A DNA stretch of 64,000 bases from Mytilus edulis (taxonomy: Eukaryota). The notes under the pieces are model-generated. The model was given only the letters and a program-made list of their open reading frames with translations, had not been told where the DNA came from and searched no databases. The translations under genes and the position numbers were made by a program. The stretch spans positions 91,760,001-91,824,000 of the forward strand of contig NC_092347.1 in NCBI RefSeq assembly GCF_963676685.1, in the 5' to 3' direction. Positions 4,901 through 62,675 of the stretch are shown piece by piece. Each line of letters opens with the position of its first letter. Position 1 is the first letter of the stretch.

Positions 4901-6837
4901 GTTTTAGTTAGATGTATTTTGTTTTTTTACCCATCTGATGAGTTAAGTCTTTTTCAACTGATTTTCATATGTTTGTTCTTATGTTGTACAGTTACACCAT
5001 TGTCCCAGGTTAGGTGAGGGTTGGGATCCGCTAACATGTTTACCCCGCTACTTTCTGTATGTATGTGCCTGACACATGTCAGGAGCCTGTAACTTAGTGG
5101 TTGTCGTTTGTTGCTGTGTTACATATTTTTTTTTTCGTTCATTGTTTTTGTTCGAATGGTTTTACGTTTGTGATTTCGAGGTCTTTTATACCTAACTATT
5201 CGGTATTGGATTTGCTCATTGTTGGACATTTTTTAATGTACATGTAATACAATTTTTCACATTTAACACTATTTAAGGCCTACTGTGAATCATTTGGTGC
5301 TGAGCTTGCAACTATCGAAGACGCACAAGAGCAAGCTTACATAGAACAAATGCTGAATGGCCTTCCTCGTAAGTCATATCAATAGTTATGTCGTCCAAAA
5401 AGGATTAATATGTATATATATAAAAAGAAGATGTGTAATGATTGCCAATGAGACAACTCTTCGCAAGAAAACAAATGGCATAGAAATTAGCAACTATAGG
5501 TCACCGTACGTCCTTCAGGATTTATTTCATTTTACTAAATTTAAATTAATTGGCATCGCAAGATTTACCATTTCACTTTTCTTTAGAACAATAAGGCTTG
5601 TAAATTTGTAGATTAAAGACAAACTACGAAATAGAGAGACAAAATAAGGGATAATTATCATATTCAGAAGGTCAACGTTATATATATGCGTGTGTAACCT
5701 CCACTTTCAACTTTTTTTCTTTTTTTTAAGTTGGAAAAATGGACGTGATAAATCATATTTTAGCATTGAAATCGGTCGTAATATCTTATTTGGCTTGTTA
5801 ACTGATTAAAGGCATAAGAAGAAAAAAATGTTCTTGTCCTCAACTAATCTTATAACCCATACACTCTCTTTCATTTACGAGTATCTTTAACCAGGTGCAA
5901 ACAGATTATCAAACACAATTCATTACGTTTATAAGGATTTCTTGTACATTACATATTAACTCATTTCTTTTAAGATGATAAAAACCAAGCAGCGTTCTGG
6001 CTAGGAGGTCATGATATATTAACAGAAGGGGAATGGCAATGGGTTATATCAATGAACAGAATCATTTACACCAATTGGGGTGACGGACAGCCGGACAACT
6101 CACATACATCCGAACATTGTCTGGAATTGTCCGGACAAAGATCATTCAAGTGGAACGATGATGGCTGTGAGGATCATCATTACTTCATATGTGAAACTGG
6201 GTTAGTATATTAGTTTTGGACATTGCATAGTCCAGAGGCGAATGTAGGTGGATCATCCCTCCTTTCCCATTGTTACATATATGGTTAATACATTCACTTT
6301 TTACTTTTACAAACCCAGTTCTAACGTTATCAAGCTGGGGATCCCCTATTTCTGATTTTTTTATGCGCACCTGCCAAAAAATGATTATAATTTTGTTGAT
6401 CAAATAACAATATAAACATACATAGTTATATTATACACCGGTACCTGTTACTGTAAGTATATGATATAGTTTTAGCAATAATATTGTATAGTGTACTTTT
6501 ACATGTTTTAGTTAATTTACTTTTGAAATGCATCTTTAATATTTATAGAATATTTTCGTTTAAATTGGGAATATATCTTTAAACATAATCATTACATTTC
6601 TGCATTATGTTGCAGACCATAATACTTGTATTCATGAAATATAGTAAAAACGCAGACGCTGATGAAAAAAAAAATAATAGTAGACTTTTCACGTGATGAA
6701 AAATTCGGATTGAGGGGAACCTCCTCTGACTTTACCAAAGAAACTTTTACAATTGATTTAGTTCGTATTGAAATCCTGTTTTGTTTTGTTGTTTCAGAAT
6801 CATTAAAAACGGTGGTAGTATACTTGGAAAGAAATGA
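105..6837 (+). CDS. Secreted C-type lectin (perlucin-like), paralogue 1, about 195 aa
   Basis: Phase-consistent GT-AG exons: 105-135 (MDNLSFLICI), 903-932 (GYLIITADTS), 1580-1657 (Thr-rich), 4416-4507 (VPPPCPRDFLGHSTSCYHAAHILATWPEAA), 5278-5368 (AYCESFGAELATIEDAQEQ), 5975-6200 (FWLGGHD..EGEWQW..YTNWGDGQPDN..EHCLE..WNDDGC..FICE), 6798-6837 (IIKNGGSILGKK*). Total 588 nt. Canonical CTLD cysteines with WIGL-like, QPD and WND motifs. The N-terminal exons are less certain than the CTLD exons. Confidence 0.88.
2466..4210 (+). mobile_element. 5'-truncated, frameshifted CR1/L2-group non-LTR retrotransposon (RT plus C-terminal Cys/His region) in an intron of lectin 1
   Basis: ORFs 2556-2888 (NYRPISL), 2981-3430 (GVPQGSLLGP, LFADD) and 3703-4209 (CHCGSDIEDVYHYFLVCPKY). 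DFSKAFD lies between the first two ORFs. Several frameshifts. Confidence 0.93.
4826..5225 (+). repeat. Interspersed repeat family B (PLE 3'-end-like), with a decayed twister core at about 5005-5090
   Basis: Homologous to 7565-8100 (-), 20700-21212 (+) and 46775-49140 (+, interrupted). Contains GAGGG-TTGGGATCC-AACATGTT-CCCCGC..CCTG..CAGGAGCCTG. Confidence 0.75.
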
Positions 6838-7564: not shown

Positions 7565-8100
7565 CTCGGGTGGAGTCAGCTATAAAAGGCCCCGAAATGA
7601 CGAATTTAAAACAATTCAAACGAAAAAACTAGCGGCCTAGTTTATGTACACAAAATAAAGAACAACACATCAACAAACGACAACCGCTGAATTAGTCTCC
7701 TGATTTGACAACCACATACATACAGAATGAAGTGGGCTTAAACATGTAAGCGGGATCCAAACCCTATCCCTAACCTGAGACAGTGGTGTAACAGTACAAC
7801 ATAATAAAGAACTGTAAAAATCAGTTGAAAAAAGCTTAACTCATCAGATGGATAAAAATAGACATACATCTAACAAAAACACGGAGTGGCCATGGCCGGG
7901 TATTTGTATATACATGTACCAACAACAAATAATAAGTACTGATCTGAGAGTACTCGCAGTTACTGACAGATGGTTCAAAGCCAATAAATAACAATTAATA
8001 TAAAAATCATGCATCTAATACTAAATTATCAATCAGTACACATCCAACATCAAAAGGATTTAGTGAAAAGACGTCATAAAATGTCAGAGAAAAACATGAC
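7565..8100 (-). repeat. Family B repeat copy, inverted relative to 4826-5225
   Basis: Reverse-complement match to 4826-5225 (CATCTGATGAGTTAAG, GGATCCCGCT, GGGGCCTTTTATAGCTGAC). Confidence 0.75.
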
Positions 8101-9628: not shown

Positions 9629-12600
9629 ATGGTTAACAGCATGATGGCTTTCTTTTATTTCTTCTTACATATTGGTAAGAATTTATTTAATTTTTGGGTT
9701 ATTTCTTTTTAAATTCAGTGATAAACACGATAAAAAAGGATTGAATTTTTGTGAGAATATATTGATTTATATATTGTTGGGTACCAGTTTTATTATAAAT
9801 AATTTTGTGTTGAAAAATTGGTATATAATATCGTATAAAATAAGTCGAACAGAAATAGTTAAAGTTATCGTGTAAGATACATTGAATTTCAATAATAGCG
9901 CTATTAATTAGCGCTGAGAGAAAACAAAAAGATAAAACAAAAAGCAGAAAACAAATTTTTTTTTTTTTCAAATCCATCAAGATAATGCGTTCGACTTGTA
10001 GCATTACGGTATTGTGTTTACGACCGGTTTTGTTAGATTTTTATTACGATATAGTTGATACCTTGTTCATTTAACTCTATACAGATGTATAAAAAGTAAA
10101 ATCACAAAAATACTGAACTCCGAGGAAATTCGAAACGGAAAGTCTCTAATCTAATGGCAAAATCAAAAGCTAAAACACATCAAACGAATGGGAAACAACT
10201 GTCATTTTCCTGACTTGGTACAGGCATTTTGTTATGTAGAATATGGTGGAGTCAACCTGGTTTTATAGCTAGCTTAACCTCTCTTGTATGGCAGTCGCAT
10301 CAAACTCCATTATATTGACAACGATACGTATAAAAAAACAAACAGACATAATAGGTAAATATGTCAACTATACAGCAGTCAACATTGTGTTATATGAAAC
10401 ATTGTGTTATAATCGTAATCACTAAAAAAACAAACAAAACGATATGTAACAAAGAAGCATAAAATGGCATATAGACTAAGCATATCACCAAAAATTAAAG
10501 ACAAGAATACACACATTTGTCATCGCATATATGATTTCTGGCAACTGTACCAGGGGATGTCTTGCATTAGCATTGAGTTATGAGCTATTCCTCCATGTTG
10601 AAGGCTATGTGGTTGTAACCTTGTGAGATAAGTAATTGCAAAGTTCTGTTTCTTTGCTTTCTATTTTGTCATGTGGTTTTATAGGATATTTTGTCCGAGC
10701 ATGATATGTGAGTAAATTACGTCATTACGTTTACTGTCAAGGATGCATTTATTAATTTGAGAATATCAGTTATTGTTAATGAAAAATATGGCATCATTAC
10801 TAAAAATATCAGTTACATTAGGCAATGCACCAAATCAATTACAAAATGACAACAAATCATATCTATATTCCAGGGAATATCATGGTGGTCATATCAAGAT
10901 GTAAGTGTCAATATATAAATACTGGTATTATTTACTAGGACTACAAAATGGGTGTTTTATCATAAAATGAAACATTTTATTCTTTGAAACTGCAATAGTG
11001 CAACTATATTTTTTTCTGAATAAAATGTAGTAGATTATCTAAATCTATATATATTATAATCTGTTTGCATATAAATTAATTAAAGAAAGATAAATAAAAT
11101 GTAAAGAAAATAAAAAAGTGTGAGGGTATCCAGATATTTTCAGATTGCATTAATTGATAAAAAAAAATCGTGTGTAAACTAGGATTTTTCGCAATTGTTT
11201 TTTTTTTAACGCCGTTTATATCACTAAAATTTAGAATTTTAGAAATACTAAGGCTTCTCTACCTCAGGAATAGATTACCTGAGCTGTATTTGGCAAAGCT
11301 TTTAGGAATTCTGGTCCTCAATGCTCTTCAACTTCGTACTTTATTTGGCCTTTTAAACATTTTTTGATTCGAGCGTCCCTGATGAGTCTTTTGTAGACGA
11401 AAAGCGCGTTGGTGTAAATTTAAATGTTTAATCCTGGTATCTATGATGAGTTTATTCACACCCATAATAAGTTTGCGGATGACGGTCAAATTGAAAAAAG
11501 TAAACAGAGAGAATTAGAAATGTTTGAAGGCAACATTTTCTAATCTTGCATGGAACAATCTCGCATGTTTCTCGATAATCAACAATCGCCCTGATAAATG
11601 CATGCAGTAATATTTGAATGTTCTCTATAGAAGCAGTATTACTAACTTTACTTGTTGTTTATTTTAGCGACTTTGCCAAACATTGAAACGCCTATCCCAC
11701 CAAGTACAAGTCAGACATTGCCTAACATGGAGACACCATTTCCGCCTAGTACGGTACAATATTTACCAAACAAAGAAACGCCGTTTCCACCATCAACAGT
11801 TCAGCCACTGGGAGTCGTGACCAATGCCACTGATTCACCTACAACTACATGTAATAATAGTTGCTTTATTTATTAATGTTTTATTAACAGTATTTGATAA
11901 TAACATGTAATTTTGTAAATTACATATTTCGTTGTGTAGTCATTTGAATTTTTCAAACATTCTTCAATAAAATTCATTTATTATTGGCCAATACCGTGCC
12001 AAGTCAAACAAAATTCTAGATTACATCTATTGTTTTTACACTTTTTGTCAATTAAATCCCTTCTGTGTAATGATCATTTTGGTGTTCCTTGCCTCGCAGT
12101 GTGCATGGTAGATTTTCCAAAAGAGATTTGTAGAATTACCTATGATACAGCTACGACAAATCGAACATCCGTGGTCATTTGGGACACTTATTCTTGAGAC
12201 AAAAAGACTATGAACAAAAAATTTAAAAAAAATGCGCATTTTCAAAACTTACAGTCATTTTTTAAATAAATTTTGAAAATCTATGCACAATAGCTTCATA
12301 ATATGAAGCAATGTCTGAACGTTGATTGTAATATACTAAAATGACTATAAATACCTTTGAATTATGGATAAAAGTATAACGCACTATATCTTCTACATTA
12401 TCTTAACACGAAATTAAGATTGTGACGATTAATCTCAAAGTAGAGATTTTACAAAACCCAAGCGTCCACGTCATCATGAACTGTAGTAGCAAACATTACA
12501 GAAATTAAATAAACATTCTGCGATACAGTGCATTAGATGATCATATATAACAAGCTGATGTTCACATGACCCATTTTATTTTAAGATTTAATTATAAATA

Positions 12601-16495: not shown

Positions 16496-17920
16496 ATTCT
16501 TGCCAATCTAATGTATCGTTCCCTCGAAGATGTAATGCCAATCGACTGGCAGTGGTGGCTGTAAATGCTACGTTTACTGCAATTTGAAAAAAATGATCAT
16601 ATCTTAAATACCACTTTCTAAACGTCAAAAATATTTCGGTCGGTAATATGATTTTGTAGTTTTAAACCAGTATCGTTGTAACTCTGATCAGACATTACTG
16701 TAATAAATTGTTATTTTGATGGAGAGTTGTCTCATTGGCACTTACACCACATCTTCCTATATCTATAGTTCCAACGTAGGAATGGCCACAGTAGAAATAT
16801 AACTGCAAACAATAACACTCAACCATTCCTAAATGATTCCGTTCAGTCGTCATTTGCAGGTGAAAAAAGTAACAGCTGAGAGAGATTATGAAGAAAGAAA
16901 TGAAAAATACACCAGATTGGACCAATGAACACATATAATTCGACAAGTACCGTGCTTCAGTTATATGACTTATAAATACAAAGGCATGAACTGTTTAACA
17001 ATATAATCACAATCACATGACAGTCGATCAAAATGATACTTGATTGATTTCTGTGTTCGAAGCGCTTTTCCGAATTATTTTTTTTTACCAGAAACGGTCA
17101 AAGCCTGACATTTGAAAGACATTAGTTTATAAATAAATAAAAGGGCCTAAAAAGAATAGCTAAATTAGGCTAAGTTCAAATTGAGGATGATAAACATACA
17201 GTTTCATAGTAATTTCTACATTTACCAAAGAGGAATTTTAGACACATATTATACGTTCTAGATAAAGGCAACAGAAGTATACCACTGCTCTATAGTCATA
17301 AATCGATTTAGAGTAGATAAATCAGGGTTCCAAACTAAACTGAGGTTAGCATTAGCTATAAAAGGAAAACAAAGTAACAACAAGAACACTGATCTACATC
17401 AAAAACAAATGCCAATATACATAGATTCGGACTATTTAAAATTCATATCAGTACCGAAAAAAGTAAAACAACAAAAAAAATGAACTCCGAGGCAAAGTTA
17501 AACGAGAAGTCCTTAAGCATATGGCAAAATCAAAACTTAAAACACATCAACCCCCTGGATAACAACTGTCATCTTCCTGACTTGGTACAGGCATTTCCTT
17601 ATATCGAAATGATGATTTAACCTGGTTTTAAAGCTAGGTAAACATCGCACTTGTATGACAGTCGCAAAAATCATGTACTACTGAGCTAGGGATAACCAAG
17701 GAGGTCGGTATCAACCCACTGCTTAAAAATCTTTATAAATATCATGACTCCGAAGCCCTTTACTAACTCAACCCTCAGCAGGATCGCTGAAAAAAAACAA
17801 GTATATATAAGTATTGAAAAGTAAAATCACAAAAATACTGAACTTAGAGGAAAATCTAATCGGAAAAGTCCATAACCACATGGCAAAATAACAAAACACA
17901 TCAAAAACGAATGGACAAGA

Positions 17921-18019
17921 ACTGTCATATTCCTGACTTGGTACAGGCATTTTCAAAATATAGAAAATGGTGGATTAAACCTGGTTTTATAGCGCTAAAC
18001 CTCTCACTTTGATGACAGT
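17921..18019 (-). ncRNA. Twister-like ribozyme (P5-type permutation) in a family C repeat (17818-18125)
   Basis: Minus strand reads ACUGUCAU..GUGA-G-A-GGU-[UUAGCGCUAUAAAACCAGGUU]-UAA-UCC-AC-CAUUUUC..GAAAAUG-CCUG-UACCAAGU-CAGG-A..AUGACAGU. P2 is imperfect. Confidence 0.6.
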
Positions 18020-20699: not shown

Positions 20700-21212
20700 T
20701 TTGTTTACTTATTGGCCTTGAATGTTTGTCCCGAATATTTTATTAACTGTGCATTTGCATTCAGCTATCGCAGATCTAATTTATTCGTTCATAGTGTGTT
20801 AATTTACGTTTTTTGATTGAGTTAAGCCTTTCAATAGATATTTTATCGTGTGTTTTCTATGTTGTGATGTTATGCCATTGTTTCAGAAAAGGGAGAAGGT
20901 TTAGTACCATTAAAACGTTTAATCCCGCTGCAAATGTTTGCACCTGTCCTCAGTCAGGAATCTGATGTACAGTAGTTGTCGTTTGTTTATGTAATTTATA
21001 AGTGTTTCTCGTTTTTTATATAGATTAGACCGTTGGTTTTCCCGTTTTAATGGTTTTACACTAGTAATTTTGGGGCCCTTTATAGCTTTTTGTTCGGTGT
21101 GAGCCAAGGCTCCGTTTTGAAGGCCGTACATTGACCTATAATGGTTTACTTTTATAAATTGTTATTTGGATGGAGAGTTGTCTCATTGGCACTCATACCA
21201 CATCTCCATATA
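20700..21212 (+). repeat. Family B-related repeat carrying a near-intact twister core and the shared 3' tail
   Basis: Ends in GAGAGTTGTCTCATTGGCACTCATACCACATCT. The same tail occurs at 700-838, 5414-5517, 16697-16765 and 60620-60718. Confidence 0.75.
20883..20965 (+). ncRNA. Twister ribozyme (P5-type), one loop-4 substitution
   Basis: UCAGA..GGGA-G-A-AGG-[UUUAGUACCAUUAAAACGUU]-UAA-UCCC-GC-UGCAAAUGUUUGCA-CCUG-UCCUCAGU-CAGG-A-AUCUGA. Confidence 0.7.
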
Positions 21213-46000: not shown

Positions 46001-49000
46001 CTATATACTCAATCTGTAACATAATCAAGCTTTATTAAACTTTAAACCAAACATCAATGAATTATTAATTAACATACAGAAACCAATGATATAATATGCC
46101 ATTCAATTTTACCCTTTTCATTTTTGTTTTATAAAAAAATTGGTTGCAAATTTAAAATGAAAAAGTAAGTAATAACATAAAGATAACACATAGCTGAGAG
46201 GATGACAGAGCAGACTGACAAAACGTTGTAAACCGAGGTGATTGACAATGTGTTTTCAAGGGGTAACAATCTACAGTATAACCCTCTTAATTTTATATGT
46301 GTGCCTAAATGTTCAGTTATTACTGCCTATTAAATTTCTAATTCAACATCATAATCATAATCATTTAATAAAGCACACAATTGACCAAGCATCTCTGTGA
46401 ATGGTAATAGAGTAAATTATCTCCCTTGTATAAACCTATCAAAATCAGGCATTTAAACTTGAAGTATAATAACCAATGATATTTCACTTCAACAATAGAG
46501 GGCAACTATAATAACTTTCTCATACTGTAACATGACAGTCAATAGTAGTATAAGTGAAAATCATTATCATAATATCTTTACAGTGTCAGTTTTATTTCAA
46601 TTCTGACATTTAAATATCTTACATCTTCTTCTGACCAAAGTCCAGGTGTACCAAAGGACTCCAATAAATCAGCACCACATAACAGACGTAGATTGACGGA
46701 ATTATCTGATTTATTTCTTAAATTGTGATTAGCATTGTCATCATCTGTAAAACAAATATTTACATTTTAACAGTTTGTTCTTATATAGTGCTGTAACACT
46801 ACTGATCCAGGTAAGGGGAGATAGAGGGTTCCTAAATGTCTTACCCAAAACATTCTATAAGCCAGTATCAAGTCAGGAGCCTGTAATTGAGTGGACGTCT
46901 TTGGTTGCTGTCTTACATATTTGCACTTCTTTTATCAGTCAGGGGACTTACTTAAACAAGTGATTTTCTAAATCACTGATTCAAGTAACATTATTTCCAT
47001 AAAAGTTGGAAGTTAGAGTTGTCTTTCTTTAATAATCACCTATTTAAGTAGTACAAATTAATCACTAGAAGAAGTGATTTAATATTAGTGTAGCTTTAAA
47101 TATAGAATACTAATGATCCAGGGACTAATTATGTTTCTAAACTTATCAGAACCAACATCTGTGTTGTCTAGGATGACCAGGTCATTTCAGGTGATGACCT
47201 TGTACTGAATCTAGGATAATGACATAAAAATCACTTGTTTAAGTATCAGACCCCAATTTCCTTCCCAAAAAGCACTTCTTTAAGTACATTCTTTAATAAC
47301 CCCAACTAATTTCAACACCCCCGAACAGTGAAATTTTTATCACGAACAGTAGAATTTTATTACATAATCTAAAAGATGAAACCTTGAACTTCACAGGAAA
47401 AATACTCCCACTGCTGTGAAAAATCTTTTAAGAAAGTATCAGCTCATTATGTAAAGCCATTATTATAGCATTTTTTCAACTAAAATAGAGTTTTCAGGTA
47501 AATGATAGCATCAAAGGCACAAACCTTGCTACTTAAAAGAAGCAAAAAGTTCATATTTTTTAATTTTACTAATTAAAAGATGTTATTTAATAATACTTTT
47601 AGATATTTGGATGATATTTTGGCTCTCAATAATGACGACTTCAGTATGTATATTAATGAAATTTTTCCTGTTGAACTTACTTTAAATAAAGCTAATACTA
47701 ACAATGACCACTGCCCTTTTCTCGATCTTGATATCTATATCACTAATGGAAAGCTGAATACTAAAATTTATGATAAAAAGGGATGATTTTTCATTTCCGA
47801 TCGTTAATTATCCGTTTTTAGATGGTGACGTTCCCTTGTCACCATCTTACGGTGTTTATATATCTCAACTTGTACGATTCGCTCGTGTATGTAACAATGT
47901 TTTAGATTTTAACGAGAGAAATTTATGTATTACTGAAAAATTATTACACCAGGGTTTTCGATATCACAAACTAGTCAAAACATTTACTAAATTTTATCAT
48001 CGGTATAAAGACATCATTCGTAAATATAGCTCAACATGCAGACTTCTAATACGTTCAGGTATTTCACATCCAATTTTTTATGGAAATATTCTTTATAAAG
48101 CACAAAGGTGTCAGTATTCACATCAGAAACTTACAAAACCTTTGAATAGACTTATTAAGAAGGGATATAATTACGATACTGTTGTCAAGTCATTAAAGAT
48201 TGCATATTTTGGCGTTAATATTGAGTCACTGATAAGGTCTTTGCATCGGAACTAAACACATTTATTCTAAAAACAGTTGTTGGCATGACACGGGTTATGT
48301 TCTTCTCATATATGTTATGATGGTATGATACTAAACCCCTAACGGGAAGGATTGTGCCTGATGTTCATATGATGAAATCATAATCTTTCAGTCAGTTTAA
48401 TTGAAGTCTGGAGCTGGCATGTCAGTTAACTGCTAGTAGTCTGTTGTTATTTATGTATTATTGTCATTTTGTTTATTTTCTTTGGTTACATCTTCTGACA
48501 TCAGACTCTGACTTCTCTTGAACTGAATTTTAATGTGCGTACTGTTATGCGTTTACTTTTCTACATTGGTTAGAGGTATAGGGGGAGGGTTGAGATCTCA
48601 CAAACATGTTTAACCCCGCCGCATTTTTGCGCCTGTCCCAAGTCAGGAGCCTCTGGCCTTTGTTAGTCTTGTATTATTTTAATTTTAGTTTCTTGTGTAC
48701 AATTTGGAAATTAGTATGGCGTTCATTATCACTGGACTAGTATATATTTGTTTAGGGGCCTGCTGAAGGACGCCTCCGGGTGCGGGAATTTCTCGCTACA
48801 TTGAAGACCTGTTGGTGACCCTCTGCTGTTGTTTTTTATTTGGTCGGGTTGTTGTCTCTTTGACACATTCCCCATTTCCATTCTCAATTTTATTTAAACC
48901 TATGTGTTTAAAATTTTGAAAAAACTACAAAATCCCAATTTGTGACAAAACCTCGAATTTGCTATTCAAATAAGTGATTTAAAAATCACTTATTTCAGTA

Positions 49001-61806: not shown

Positions 61807-62675
61807 CTTATTGTTTATTCCGTAATTAATCAGTTCCATACCATGCCTGCATTCCGGCAATTAGTCCTCGATGTAACAATATTTTTATTTTAATAATTGT
61901 TACATTTCAATGTAACCGTAGCCATGCAGTGCCTACCAACAACAGGAATTATTCAGTAAAAAATTACGAAATGCATCAACAATACCAATGATATTTCACG
62001 TCAGATGTCAAAGAGCAGCAGCTTAGTATATTCAATATAATATTTTAGTTGCCTGGATAACTGATATACACTATTGACACATTGTTCCAAAACTATATAA
62101 GCATAATAAGATCGTTAAAATTCCTAACATTCTATAAACCAACGGGCTGACATAGCCATGTCATTATCGTCCGAACTTACCCGAAACAATGTCCGAACAT
62201 ACCCGAAACTGTCCGAAGTTCCCCACAGGTGGTTTTACCCGTGGATATGCATTTTTTTAACTGTTGATAAGTGATATTATAACAAAAGAGGAATAAATCA
62301 TAACTATAATATGCCCACAAAAATGTGACAAAAAAATTTACACATTCTGACAACGGAAAACCACTTTCGGAGCCTGTTTCTATAAAGGTGTCCGAACATC
62401 CCCGGTTGTACCCTAGTCCAAATAGGTATGACGTCATAAGAGACGTATAATAGCCTTTCAAGACTTCATAATTATTTGGACTAGGATTTATATAGTTACA
62501 GGTATCAAGTGAAGACAAGATTTTTTTTAATATGTTGTAGACTTGGAGATATAAAGCTTAAGGTACATGTAGTCTATAGCTAACTGGTTGAGTTAGGGAA
62601 TATCTTCTCTCGCTTAATTGGTTCGAGCGCTGAGTTTATCAGGTTGGACTCGAAGTCTAGAAAAAGTAGGACATT

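What the first reader, a model, noticed from the sequence alone, without database searches (positions are those of the whole stretch)
48568..48658. Intact P5-type twister ribozyme in the 3' region of a Penelope-like retroelement
Seen: 310 nt after the RT stop the sequence has the twister elements in P5-permuted order. These are a 10-bp P5, P2 (GGGG/CCCC), the G-A-GGG strand, a UAA cleavage site (predicted U48611/A48612), P3, and P4 CCUG/CAGG with loop UCCCAAGU, giving pseudoknots CCC/GGG and GC/GU. Known: PLE terminal repeats characteristically carry hammerhead ribozymes, and twister is a separate self-cleaving class. Inference: this PLE lineage uses twister instead of hammerhead to process its transcript ends. 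I cannot confirm from here whether this association is already described.
Basis: partly seen in the sequence, partly recalled or inferred. Interest (0 to 1): 0.92.

Follow-up and report, generated by a model that had tools for sequence, protein, structure and literature searches.

The report
Twister ribozyme fold in Naiad retroelement tail
The 91-base stretch is a well-conserved, rearranged copy of the twister self-cutting RNA in the tail of a Naiad-type Penelope-like jumping gene, a group described as lacking the hammerhead ribozyme of its relatives; cutting itself is unproven, and two indirect tests found no trace of it.

Summary
When only the motif is searched, Rfam's one meaningful hit is Twister-P5 in the predicted register. 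It scores 23.1 bits, below the gathering score of 37.6.

The host is a 5'-truncated, frameshifted copy of a Naiad-clade Penelope-like element (PLE). Naiads have an N-terminal GIY-YIG endonuclease and a DKA motif. This family also has three in-frame TGA codons and a SECIS element. The core segment of the motif occurs at least 7,210 times in this genome.

In 80 marine-metagenome contigs encoding related reverse transcriptases, a model of the motif hits 29 times, always on the gene's strand. Of these, 28 lie downstream of the gene, usually about 300 nt after it. Both pseudoknots and all four helices covary.

Helix P1 is missing. In its place are two self-complementary boxes. The first is a perfect palindrome in 22 of 22 distinct variants, with about 15 different sequences.

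Cleavage is not shown. RNA reads cross the site with no pile-up of ends, and genomic copies do not start there.

The searched literature says Naiads lack hammerheads and never links them to twister. This scan has already reached the same reading at least eight times elsewhere in this genome.

The parts
47585..48894 (+). 5'-truncated, frameshifted copy of a Naiad-clade Penelope-like retroelement. It corresponds to positions 5406-6714 of a 3,859-bp longer copy, L070:2856-6714.
   Evidence: copies share the 3' end at about 48894 and have variable 5' ends; reverse-transcriptase C-terminus with the YLDD motif.
47580..48255 (+). Remnant of the C-terminal part of the reverse-transcriptase reading frame. 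It is two overlapping ORFs in different frames, with the stop codon at 48253-48255.
48307..48371 (+). SECIS-like element 52 nt after the stop codon.
   Evidence: 32.3 bits, against a gathering score of 35. The inverted copy scores 36.8 bits.
48568..48577 (+). P5, 5' strand.
48581..48584 (+). P2, 3' strand (GGGG).
48585..48589 (+). GAGGG strand. Positions 48587-48589 form pseudoknot T1 with loop positions 48637-48639.
48591..48600 (+). Palindromic box 1 (UGAGAUCUCA), in the place of the 3' strand of P1.
48602..48611 (+). Palindromic box 2 (AAACAUGUUU). It ends with U48611, the nucleotide 5' of the predicted cut.
48611..48613 (+). UAA, with the predicted scissile bond between U48611 and A48612.
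   Evidence: alignment to Twister-P5. Cleavage not demonstrated.
48614..48617 (+). P2, 5' strand (CCCC).
48618..48619 (+). GC of pseudoknot T2, pairing with G48642 and U48643.
48621..48630 (+). Optional P3 hairpin (GCA/UGC).
48632..48647 (+). P4 (CCUG/CAGG) with the 8-nt loop UCCCAAGU.
48649..48658 (+). P5, 3' strand.
48659..48894 (+). Rest of the 3' tail, up to the common 3' end of all copies. The last 55 nt or so are shared with other families.
51141..51785 (-). Inverted, 99% identical second copy of the tail. It carries its own twister motif at 51374-51463 and a SECIS at 51663-51727.

Best explanation
Window 48568-48658 is a twister-class ribozyme fold opened at P5. It was inherited with, and conserved in, the 3' untranslated tail of a selenoprotein-coding Naiad-type Penelope-like retroelement. 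It sits about 310 nt after the stop codon and about 283 nt before the element's 3' end.

Shown: the fold (P5, P2, P3, P4 and both pseudoknots), its conservation with compensatory changes, and its fixed position and strand relative to the Naiad gene in many lineages.

Inferred: it self-cleaves between U48611 and A48612, and so fills the role that hammerhead ribozymes fill in canonical Penelope-like elements. That role would be to cut read-through or head-to-tail (pseudo-LTR) transcripts.

Also inferred: because P1 is replaced by two self-complementary boxes that cannot fold within one molecule, efficient cutting probably needs two motifs to pair, either two RNAs or two tandem copies. Single-copy template RNAs would then stay whole. 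This would explain why genomic copies and bulk RNA run through the site.

My estimated odds:
- Genuine twister fold under selection: about 0.9.
- Catalytically competent: about 0.65.
- Dimer-dependent: about 0.4.
For: Rfam:
- Twister-P5 is the only meaningful hit to the motif. It covers the full model in the predicted register (23.1 bits).
- Sister families also hit the twister clan (18.5 bits, 21 bits).

Covariation within this genome:
- 91.4% of cells are paired, against 83.1% in shuffles.
- There are 84 double-sided changes, against 19.4 in shuffles. None of 500 shuffles reached either value.

Covariation in metagenome relatives:
- 91% of cells are paired, against 67% in shuffles.
- 18 of 23 pairs change on both sides.
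- The covariation score is 0.648, against 0.198 in shuffles and at most 0.108 with partners slid.
- Pseudoknots T1 and T2 covary although they were not part of the search model.

Host and association:
- The host is a Naiad with N-terminal GIY-YIG motifs, CxC and DKA motifs, and three in-frame TGA codons. It has a SECIS element.
- Copies share their 3' end and have variable 5' ends. A head-to-tail junction is seen in L068.
- All 29 model hits in the metagenome loci are on the ORF strand, and 28 lie downstream of the ORF.
- The motif is present in 15 of 16 loci with at least 48% RT identity and at least 700 nt of downstream sequence, mostly 295-325 nt after the ORF.
- Between families, the twister is the only alignable island in the tail apart from the extreme 3' end.

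Palindromes:
- Box 1 is a perfect palindrome in 22 of 22 distinct linkers, and is at least 8 nt long in 21. Only 7.8% of shuffled linkers have a palindrome of 8 nt or more.
- The linker alone does not fold (0 kcal/mol) but pairs as a dimer (-15.4 kcal/mol).

Literature:
- P1 is dispensable for twister cleavage (PMC11662667).
- Hammerheads in Penelope-like elements act as dimers (cited in PMC6765202).
Against: - The Rfam score is below the gathering threshold (23.1 against 37.6). There is no hit in the whole-window search or the 601-nt search.
- There is no P1 helix.
- Raw RNA reads (run X24) cross the site with no pile-up of ends and no step in depth.
- Contigs from RNA libraries also span the site (table 8).
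- There is no excess of genomic copies starting at A48612: 8 candidates against at least 7,210 copies spanning the site. Efficient cleavage in cis should have left many such copies.
- The nested minimum-free-energy fold pairs GGGUUGAG with UUUAACCC, which hides the cleavage site.
- More distant Cys-type Naiads mostly lack a detectable motif (1 of 7), so the element can do without it.
Confidence: 0.6

Rival explanations
1. The motif is a twister-derived fold that no longer cuts. It is kept as a structural signal in the 3' tail, for example as a recognition or positioning element for the element's reverse transcriptase during target-primed reverse transcription, or for RNA pairing or packaging through the two palindromes.
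For: - No RNA ends at the site.
- No genomic copies start there.
- All copies carry the motif together with the common 3' end.
- P1 is missing.
- The Rfam score is below gathering.
Against: - The nucleotides that make up the twister active site and its pseudoknots stay fixed or covary over lineages whose RT is only about 50% identical. These include the A after the scissile bond, the GA before T1, and the loop AAG.
- A protein-binding fold would not be expected to keep exactly the catalytic layout.
- P1 is dispensable for catalysis (PMC11662667).
Confidence: 0.22
2. The motif is an ordinary monomeric, P1-less twister that cuts every transcript in cis. The two palindromes serve something else, such as a DNA-level site or pairing of template RNAs.
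For: - P1 is dispensable (PMC11662667).
- The core is complete.
- After cutting, the 10-bp P5 together with P2 and T1 could hold the two products together.
Against: - Constitutive cutting would sever the coding part from the 3' end used for priming, and would produce many 283-nt copies starting at A48612. These are not seen.
- RNA reads show no break.
- The strict palindromy of box 1, with about 15 different sequences, calls for a symmetric duplex next to the active site.
Confidence: 0.15
3. The motif is a chance resemblance, or a low-complexity artefact of an abundant repeat.
For: No Rfam hit at gathering score.
Against: - A full-length hit in the correct register.
- Covariation in every helix and in both pseudoknots.
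- 29 of 29 hits on the ORF strand.
- The pattern is expected 0.00 times by chance.
Confidence: 0.01

Closest known systems
Type-P5 twister ribozyme (Rfam RF02684, clan CL00120)
   Same: - Order of elements: P5, P2 3' strand, GAGGG, the P1 region, UAA, P2 5' strand, GC, P4.
- The 8-nt loop UCCCAAGY.
- Both pseudoknots.
- An optional P3.
   Different: - There is no P1 hairpin. A 21-22-nt linker with two palindromic boxes stands in its place.
- The score is below Rfam's gathering threshold.
- It lies in an animal retroelement present in thousands of copies.
Minimal hammerhead ribozymes in the pseudo-LTRs of canonical Penelope-like elements, which act as dimers (Cervera and de la Pena 2014; Lunse et al. 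2017, both cited in PMC6765202)
   Same: - Same kind of host element and the same region, the tail that forms the pseudo-LTR.
- A closing helix too weak to form within one molecule, with a palindrome that could pair two copies.
   Different: - A different ribozyme class.
- Here there are two separate palindromes, not one extended helix III.
- Dimer action is inferred, not tested.
Twister variants at the 5' end of Perere-3 (RTE-clade) non-LTR retrotransposons of Schistosoma mansoni (PMC8501958); twister in the 5' end of RTE elements, mentioned as in preparation in PMC7761336
   Same: A twister-class ribozyme carried by a retrotransposon.
   Different: - Those are type-P1-like motifs at the 5' end. 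Part of their P1 comes from the target-site duplication, and genomic footprints of cleavage are present.
- Here the motif is opened at P5, lies in the 3' tail of a Penelope-like element, and no footprint of cleavage was found.
Selenoprotein-coding Naiad elements of clams and spiders (Craig et al. 2021, PMC8557442)
   Same: - N-terminal GIY-YIG, CxC and DKA motifs.
- In-frame TGA at conserved Cys positions.
- A SECIS element just after the stop codon.
- Very high copy number.
- 5' truncation, with tandem and inverted arrangements.
   Different: That paper reports no canonical hammerhead in Naiads and does not mention twister (0 occurrences). Here a twister fold lies downstream of the SECIS.

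Membership tests
Twister ribozyme (type P5) | Helices P2 and P4, supported by covariation | tested here: met
   The P2 pair at columns 15-58 shows GC 9, UA 9, AU 2, CG 2. The P4 pairs at columns 166-182 and 168-179 change on both sides in 10 and 11 sequences.
Twister ribozyme (type P5) | Two pseudoknots between the P4 loop and the strands next to P2 | tested here: met
   T1 pairs show GC, AU, GU and UA. T2 pair 62-177 shows CG 12, AU 5, GU 5. Neither pseudoknot was in the search model.
Twister ribozyme (type P5) | Conserved core nucleotides: N-A-A at the cut, GAGG(G), GC after P2, loop YCCNAAGY | tested here: met
   alignment to RF02684; rows of A5.
Twister ribozyme (type P5) | Score at or above Rfam's gathering threshold | tested here: not met
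   23.1 bits against 37.6. No hit. A genome-wide search with RF02684 found nothing, but only 79 of 31,236 candidates were scored.
Twister ribozyme (type P5) | P1 helix next to the cleavage site | tested here: not met
   The linker 48590-48611 has no internal fold (0 kcal/mol). Rfam skips the P1 positions. P1 is reported to be dispensable (PMC11662667).
Twister ribozyme (type P5) | Site-specific self-cleavage giving 5'-OH and 2',3'-cyclic phosphate ends | not testable with these tools
   Indirect tests found no trace. RNA reads show no ends at the site, and there is no excess of copies starting at A48612.
Penelope-like element, Naiad clade | A single ORF with an N-terminal GIY-YIG endonuclease, a CxC linker, DKA instead of DKG, and a C-terminal RT | tested here: met
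   (L070:3214-6075) shows IIYLL...YVGET...R..EH, CNC, PADKA and FRYLDD. The same layout is seen in metagenome relatives. Pfam models are silent on both pieces, so this rests on motifs and on 3,166 homologues without names.
Penelope-like element, Naiad clade | Common 3' end, variable 5' truncation, and partial tandem and inverted arrangements | tested here: met
Penelope-like element, Naiad clade | No canonical hammerhead | tested here: met
   No hammerhead at gathering score in the window. The literature agrees (PMC8557442).
Selenoprotein-coding Naiad | In-frame TGA at conserved Cys positions, plus a SECIS in the 3' UTR | tested here: met
   TGA at codons 37, 48 and 473. Cys stands at the DKA-box position in Cys-type relatives. 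SECIS scores 36.8 and 32.3 bits. Sub-threshold SECIS hits occur in 8 of 15 relatives.

The most novel reading that the evidence does not exclude
Naiad elements carry a twister that works only as a pair. The two palindromic boxes of similar length (6-10 nt) that replace P1 would form two intermolecular helices bridging two ribozyme cores. Cutting would then be switched on only in tandem transcripts or at high RNA concentration. That would be a convergent copy, in a second ribozyme class, of the dimer-gated hammerheads of the other Penelope-like elements. It would imply that a pairing-gated self-cleaver is a general requirement of this retroelement class.
Probability: 0.35. Interest if true: 0.85.

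Novelty: new variant of a known kind. Interest (0 to 1): 0.72.

Why it matters
Penelope-like elements are defined partly by their hammerhead ribozymes. The Naiad clade dominates many invertebrate genomes and was reported to lack them. This raised the question of whether the ribozyme is needed at all (PMC8557442).

A conserved twister fold at the equivalent place in Naiad tails suggests the role is kept but filled by another ribozyme class. It also gives twister, whose function in animals is largely unknown, a concrete and testable genomic role.

The P1-less design with two palindromes would be the first natural hint of a dimer-dependent twister.

The negative results here matter too. No RNA ends and no genomic copies start at the site. 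Any model must therefore explain how template RNAs escape cutting.

Tried and rejected
- **Rfam at gathering score and in a 601-nt search:** no twister hit. Only the 107-nt search found one.
- **Genome-wide RF02684 search:** nothing, but only 79 of 31,236 candidates were scored. Uninformative.
- **Family 2 (window 20876-20972):** no Rfam twister hit, although my own model and the covariation include it.
- **Pfam on the ORF pieces:** no RT or GIY-YIG model matched.
- **RNA evidence for cleavage:** none.
- **Genomic 5' ends at the cleavage site:** none above background.
- **A lone 5'-truncated family-4 copy that seems to start at the AA after the cut (L033:1574-1647):** a single case, not supported by the family-1 count.
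- **The consistent read continuation after 48897:** not found in any locus I held.
- **Box 2:** shows no formal covariation in alignment A3. Its outer AAAC/GUUU arms are simply conserved.
- **Supplementary consensus sequences of PMC8557442:** not held.
- **Allowance for DNA from the window's genome:** As a result, families 2-5 could not be traced to full elements in this genome.
- **Chance resemblance:** rejected.

Full report
**1. The observation**

- a 10-bp P5 (48568-48577 with 48649-48658, three of the pairs G-U);
- P2 (GGGG at 48581-48584 with CCCC at 48614-48617);
- GAGGG at 48585-48589;
- UAA at 48611-48613;
- GCC at 48618-48620;
- a small P3 hairpin at 48621-48630;
- P4 (CCUG/CAGG) with the loop UCCCAAGU at 48632-48647.

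The upstream reading frame stops at 48255, so the motif starts 312 nt after it.

Rfam gave no twister hit at gathering score over the whole window, and none in a 601-nt search. When only 107 nt were searched, the one meaningful hit among 4,227 families was Twister-P5 (RF02684). It covered the full model at 48581-48647 on the + strand, in exactly the predicted register, at 23.1 bits and E = 0.0027. The gathering score is 37.6. The 20 model positions of P1 were skipped and P3 was treated as an insertion, which accounts for the low score.

The 16-nt P4-plus-loop pattern occurs six times in the window, against 0.00 expected.

**2. The host element**

The window has an inverted pair of 645-nt arms at 48249-48893 and 51141-51785, 99% complementary.

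Genomic copies share a 3' end at about 48894 and have variable 5' ends. That is the mark of 5'-truncated retrotransposition. The window copy begins at 47585 and has a frameshift.

A longer copy (L070:2856-6714, 3,859 bp) has a frame of 954 codons that stays open if three TGA codons (37, 48 and 473) are read through. That frame shows, in order:
- N-terminal GIY-YIG motifs;
- a CxC motif;
- PADKA followed by a TGA codon;
- a reverse transcriptase with FRYLDD.

These are the features that Craig et al. 2021 give for Naiad-clade Penelope-like elements, including the selenoprotein-coding forms (PMC8557442). A SECIS_1 match lies 52 nt after the stop codon, at 32.3 bits. Its inverted twin at 51663-51727 scores 36.8 bits, above the gathering score of 35.

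Pfam models are silent on the protein, so the assignment rests on motifs. A protein search found 3,166 unnamed homologues.

In L068, a tail is followed head-to-tail by the 5' region of the next copy. This is the partial-tandem, pseudo-LTR arrangement. A 35-nt segment spanning GAGGG to the cleavage site occurs 7,210 times exactly in the genome.

**3. Is it a real twister fold?**

I built a covariance model from six sequences of three families.
- It finds 10 motifs in the 64-kb window.
- It finds 66 in the other loci.

On that alignment, 91.4% of cells pair, against 83.1% in shuffles. There are 84 double-sided changes against 19.4. None of 500 shuffles reached these values.

Other families also hit the Rfam twister clan:
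- family 4 hits Twister-P5 at 18.5 bits;
- family 3 hits twister-P1 at 21 bits;
- family 2 has no hit.

Between families, the twister is the only alignable island in the tail apart from the extreme 3' end.

**4. Independent material**

A search of public metagenome contigs with an alignment of the reverse-transcriptase part returned 80 loci at 37-99% identity. The model hit 29 of them, all on the strand of the gene. Of these, 28 are downstream of the gene, mostly 295-325 nt after its estimated end. The exception, L099:44-144, lies upstream, as expected for a pseudo-LTR.

Among loci with at least 700 nt of sequence after the gene:
- 15 of 16 with at least 48% RT identity carry the motif;
- 1 of 7 with lower identity does.

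A search with filters off found nothing more. No hammerhead reached gathering score in the 20 twister-negative loci that were scanned.

The twister-positive relatives are again long frames with 3-6 in-frame TGA codons and the PADKA-TGA box. Eight of 15 have a sub-threshold SECIS between the gene and the twister. Two Cys-type lineages, L120 and L124, also carry the motif.

On this alignment:
- 91% of cells pair, against 67% in shuffles;
- 18 of 23 pairs change on both sides;
- the covariation score is 0.648, against 0.198 in shuffles and at most 0.108 when partners are slid.

The two pseudoknots were not part of the model and so were not fitted to it. They covary too. T2 shows CG 12, AU 5, GU 5. 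T1 shows GC, AU, GU and UA.

I regard the fold as established.

**5. P1 is missing**

The 21-22-nt linker between GAGGG and UAA has no complementarity between its ends, and it does not fold on its own (0 kcal/mol). It holds two self-complementary boxes instead.

Box 1 (48591-48600) is a perfect palindrome in 22 of 22 distinct linkers. In 21 of them it is at least 8 nt long, and there are about 15 different sequences. Only 7.8% of shuffled linkers have a palindrome of 8 nt or more. Four of its five pairs change on both sides in the in-genome alignment.

Box 2 (48602-48611) follows the pattern AAAC-NN-GUUU and includes the U before the cut. Its centre is often self-complementary, but it shows no formal covariation.

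A palindrome that runs through its own centre cannot be a hairpin. It fits a symmetric duplex between two copies. The linker dimer is predicted at -15.4 kcal/mol.

This recalls the dimer-acting minimal hammerheads of canonical Penelope-like elements (cited in PMC6765202). P1 is reported to be dispensable for twister cleavage (PMC11662667).

**6. Does it cut in the animal?**

Two indirect tests found no trace.

Raw reads of an RNA run of the same species label (X24; 4,710 reads laid) cross U48611/A48612. There is no place where many molecules begin or end, and no step in depth. Both strands are covered, and reads run on into diverse AT-rich flanks. Much of this signal is therefore read-through transcription or DNA rather than the element's own RNA. 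The tool's threshold is a fifth of the local depth, so a modest pile-up would be missed.

Among genomic copies, only 8 have all four bases before AACCCC different from the element's own sequence. Most of these can be read as small internal deletions. At least 7,210 copies span the site. At this family's rate of 5' truncation, a few such cases are expected at any position.

So template RNAs were not cut at this site, or cut products are not copied. The nested minimum-free-energy fold also offers an alternative pairing that hides the cleavage site.

**7. Mechanism**

Shown: a twister fold kept by selection, at a fixed place and on a fixed strand in Naiad tails.

Inferred, by analogy with hammerheads in other Penelope-like elements: it cuts multimeric or read-through transcripts at the upstream tail of partial tandems. 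Because P1 is replaced by two palindromes, it probably cuts only when two motifs pair. That would let single-copy templates reach the 3' end intact.

Rivals:
- a non-cutting structural signal for the reverse transcriptase;
- a constitutive monomeric ribozyme whose palindromes serve another purpose.

**8. Novelty**

In the searchable literature:
- Naiads are said to lack canonical hammerheads, and twister is not mentioned (PMC8557442; 0 occurrences).
- No paper holds both 'Naiad' and 'twister'.
- Papers that mention both twister and Penelope-like elements do not link them.
- Twister is known at the 5' end of RTE-clade elements (PMC8501958, PMC7761336).
- Bivalve twisters have been predicted in a survey restricted to type P1, with no mention of retrotransposons (PMC11662667).

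Subscription journals were not searched.

This scan has already reached the same reading at least eight times on other DNA of this genome. Notes on this window gave me the coordinates of two sister families and the palindrome idea, which I tested.

**9. Limits**

Frames were only read, with TGA marked.

Noticed in passing
window 48307-48371 (+) and 51663-51727 (-); L070:3214-6075: The element is a selenoprotein-coding Naiad. It has three in-frame TGA codons at conserved Cys positions and a SECIS element just after the stop codon. Metagenome relatives have 3-6 in-frame TGA codons and sub-threshold SECIS hits.
   Followed up: partly
window 5004-5096(+), 7688-7777(-), 10194-10294(-), 17561-17661(-), 17918-18017(-), 20882-20971(+), 46806-46890(+), 62497-62583(+, weak): Eight further twister-like motifs from other repeat families lie in the same 64-kb window. 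That is roughly one per 6-7 kb.
   Followed up: partly
G000:C4:73658954-73660977: Family-2 motifs occur three times on one strand, 800-920 nt apart. This could be a short tandem, non-autonomous element of the retrozyme kind. The DNA could not be fetched.
   Followed up: no
L076:4157-4247 and L077:2114-2204: Family-2-type twisters (GAAGG with loop CCU, a compensatory change in T1) lie about 680 nt after a Naiad gene that is 67-68% identical to this one. Family 2 is therefore also a Naiad tail.
   Followed up: partly
window 48840-48894: Read depth doubles over the last 55 nt or so, and reads from other families join at 48839 and 48841. The extreme 3' end is shared by several families, perhaps as the site the reverse transcriptase recognises.
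   Followed up: no
window 48897 onward (table 7): 247 RNA reads continue past the element's end with one consistent sequence (agreement 0.9). I could not find that sequence in any locus I held.
   Followed up: partly
window 48605-48638 (table 5): 14 reads go back 34 nt (48638 to 48605), and 8 reads skip 48600-48653 with extra letters. These point to variant copies with a duplication or rearrangement inside the twister.
   Followed up: no
window 48587-48617: The nested minimum-free-energy fold pairs GGGUUGAG with UUUAACCC, hiding the cleavage site. This is a possible inactive conformer.
   Followed up: no
L099:44-144: In a metagenome relative, a twister lies about 2.36 kb upstream of the start of the RT match, on the same strand. 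This is as expected for an upstream pseudo-LTR tail.
   Followed up: no
window 52392-53693: Several tandem repeat families with units of about 66, 161 and 261 nt lie just beyond the inverted tail copy.
   Followed up: no
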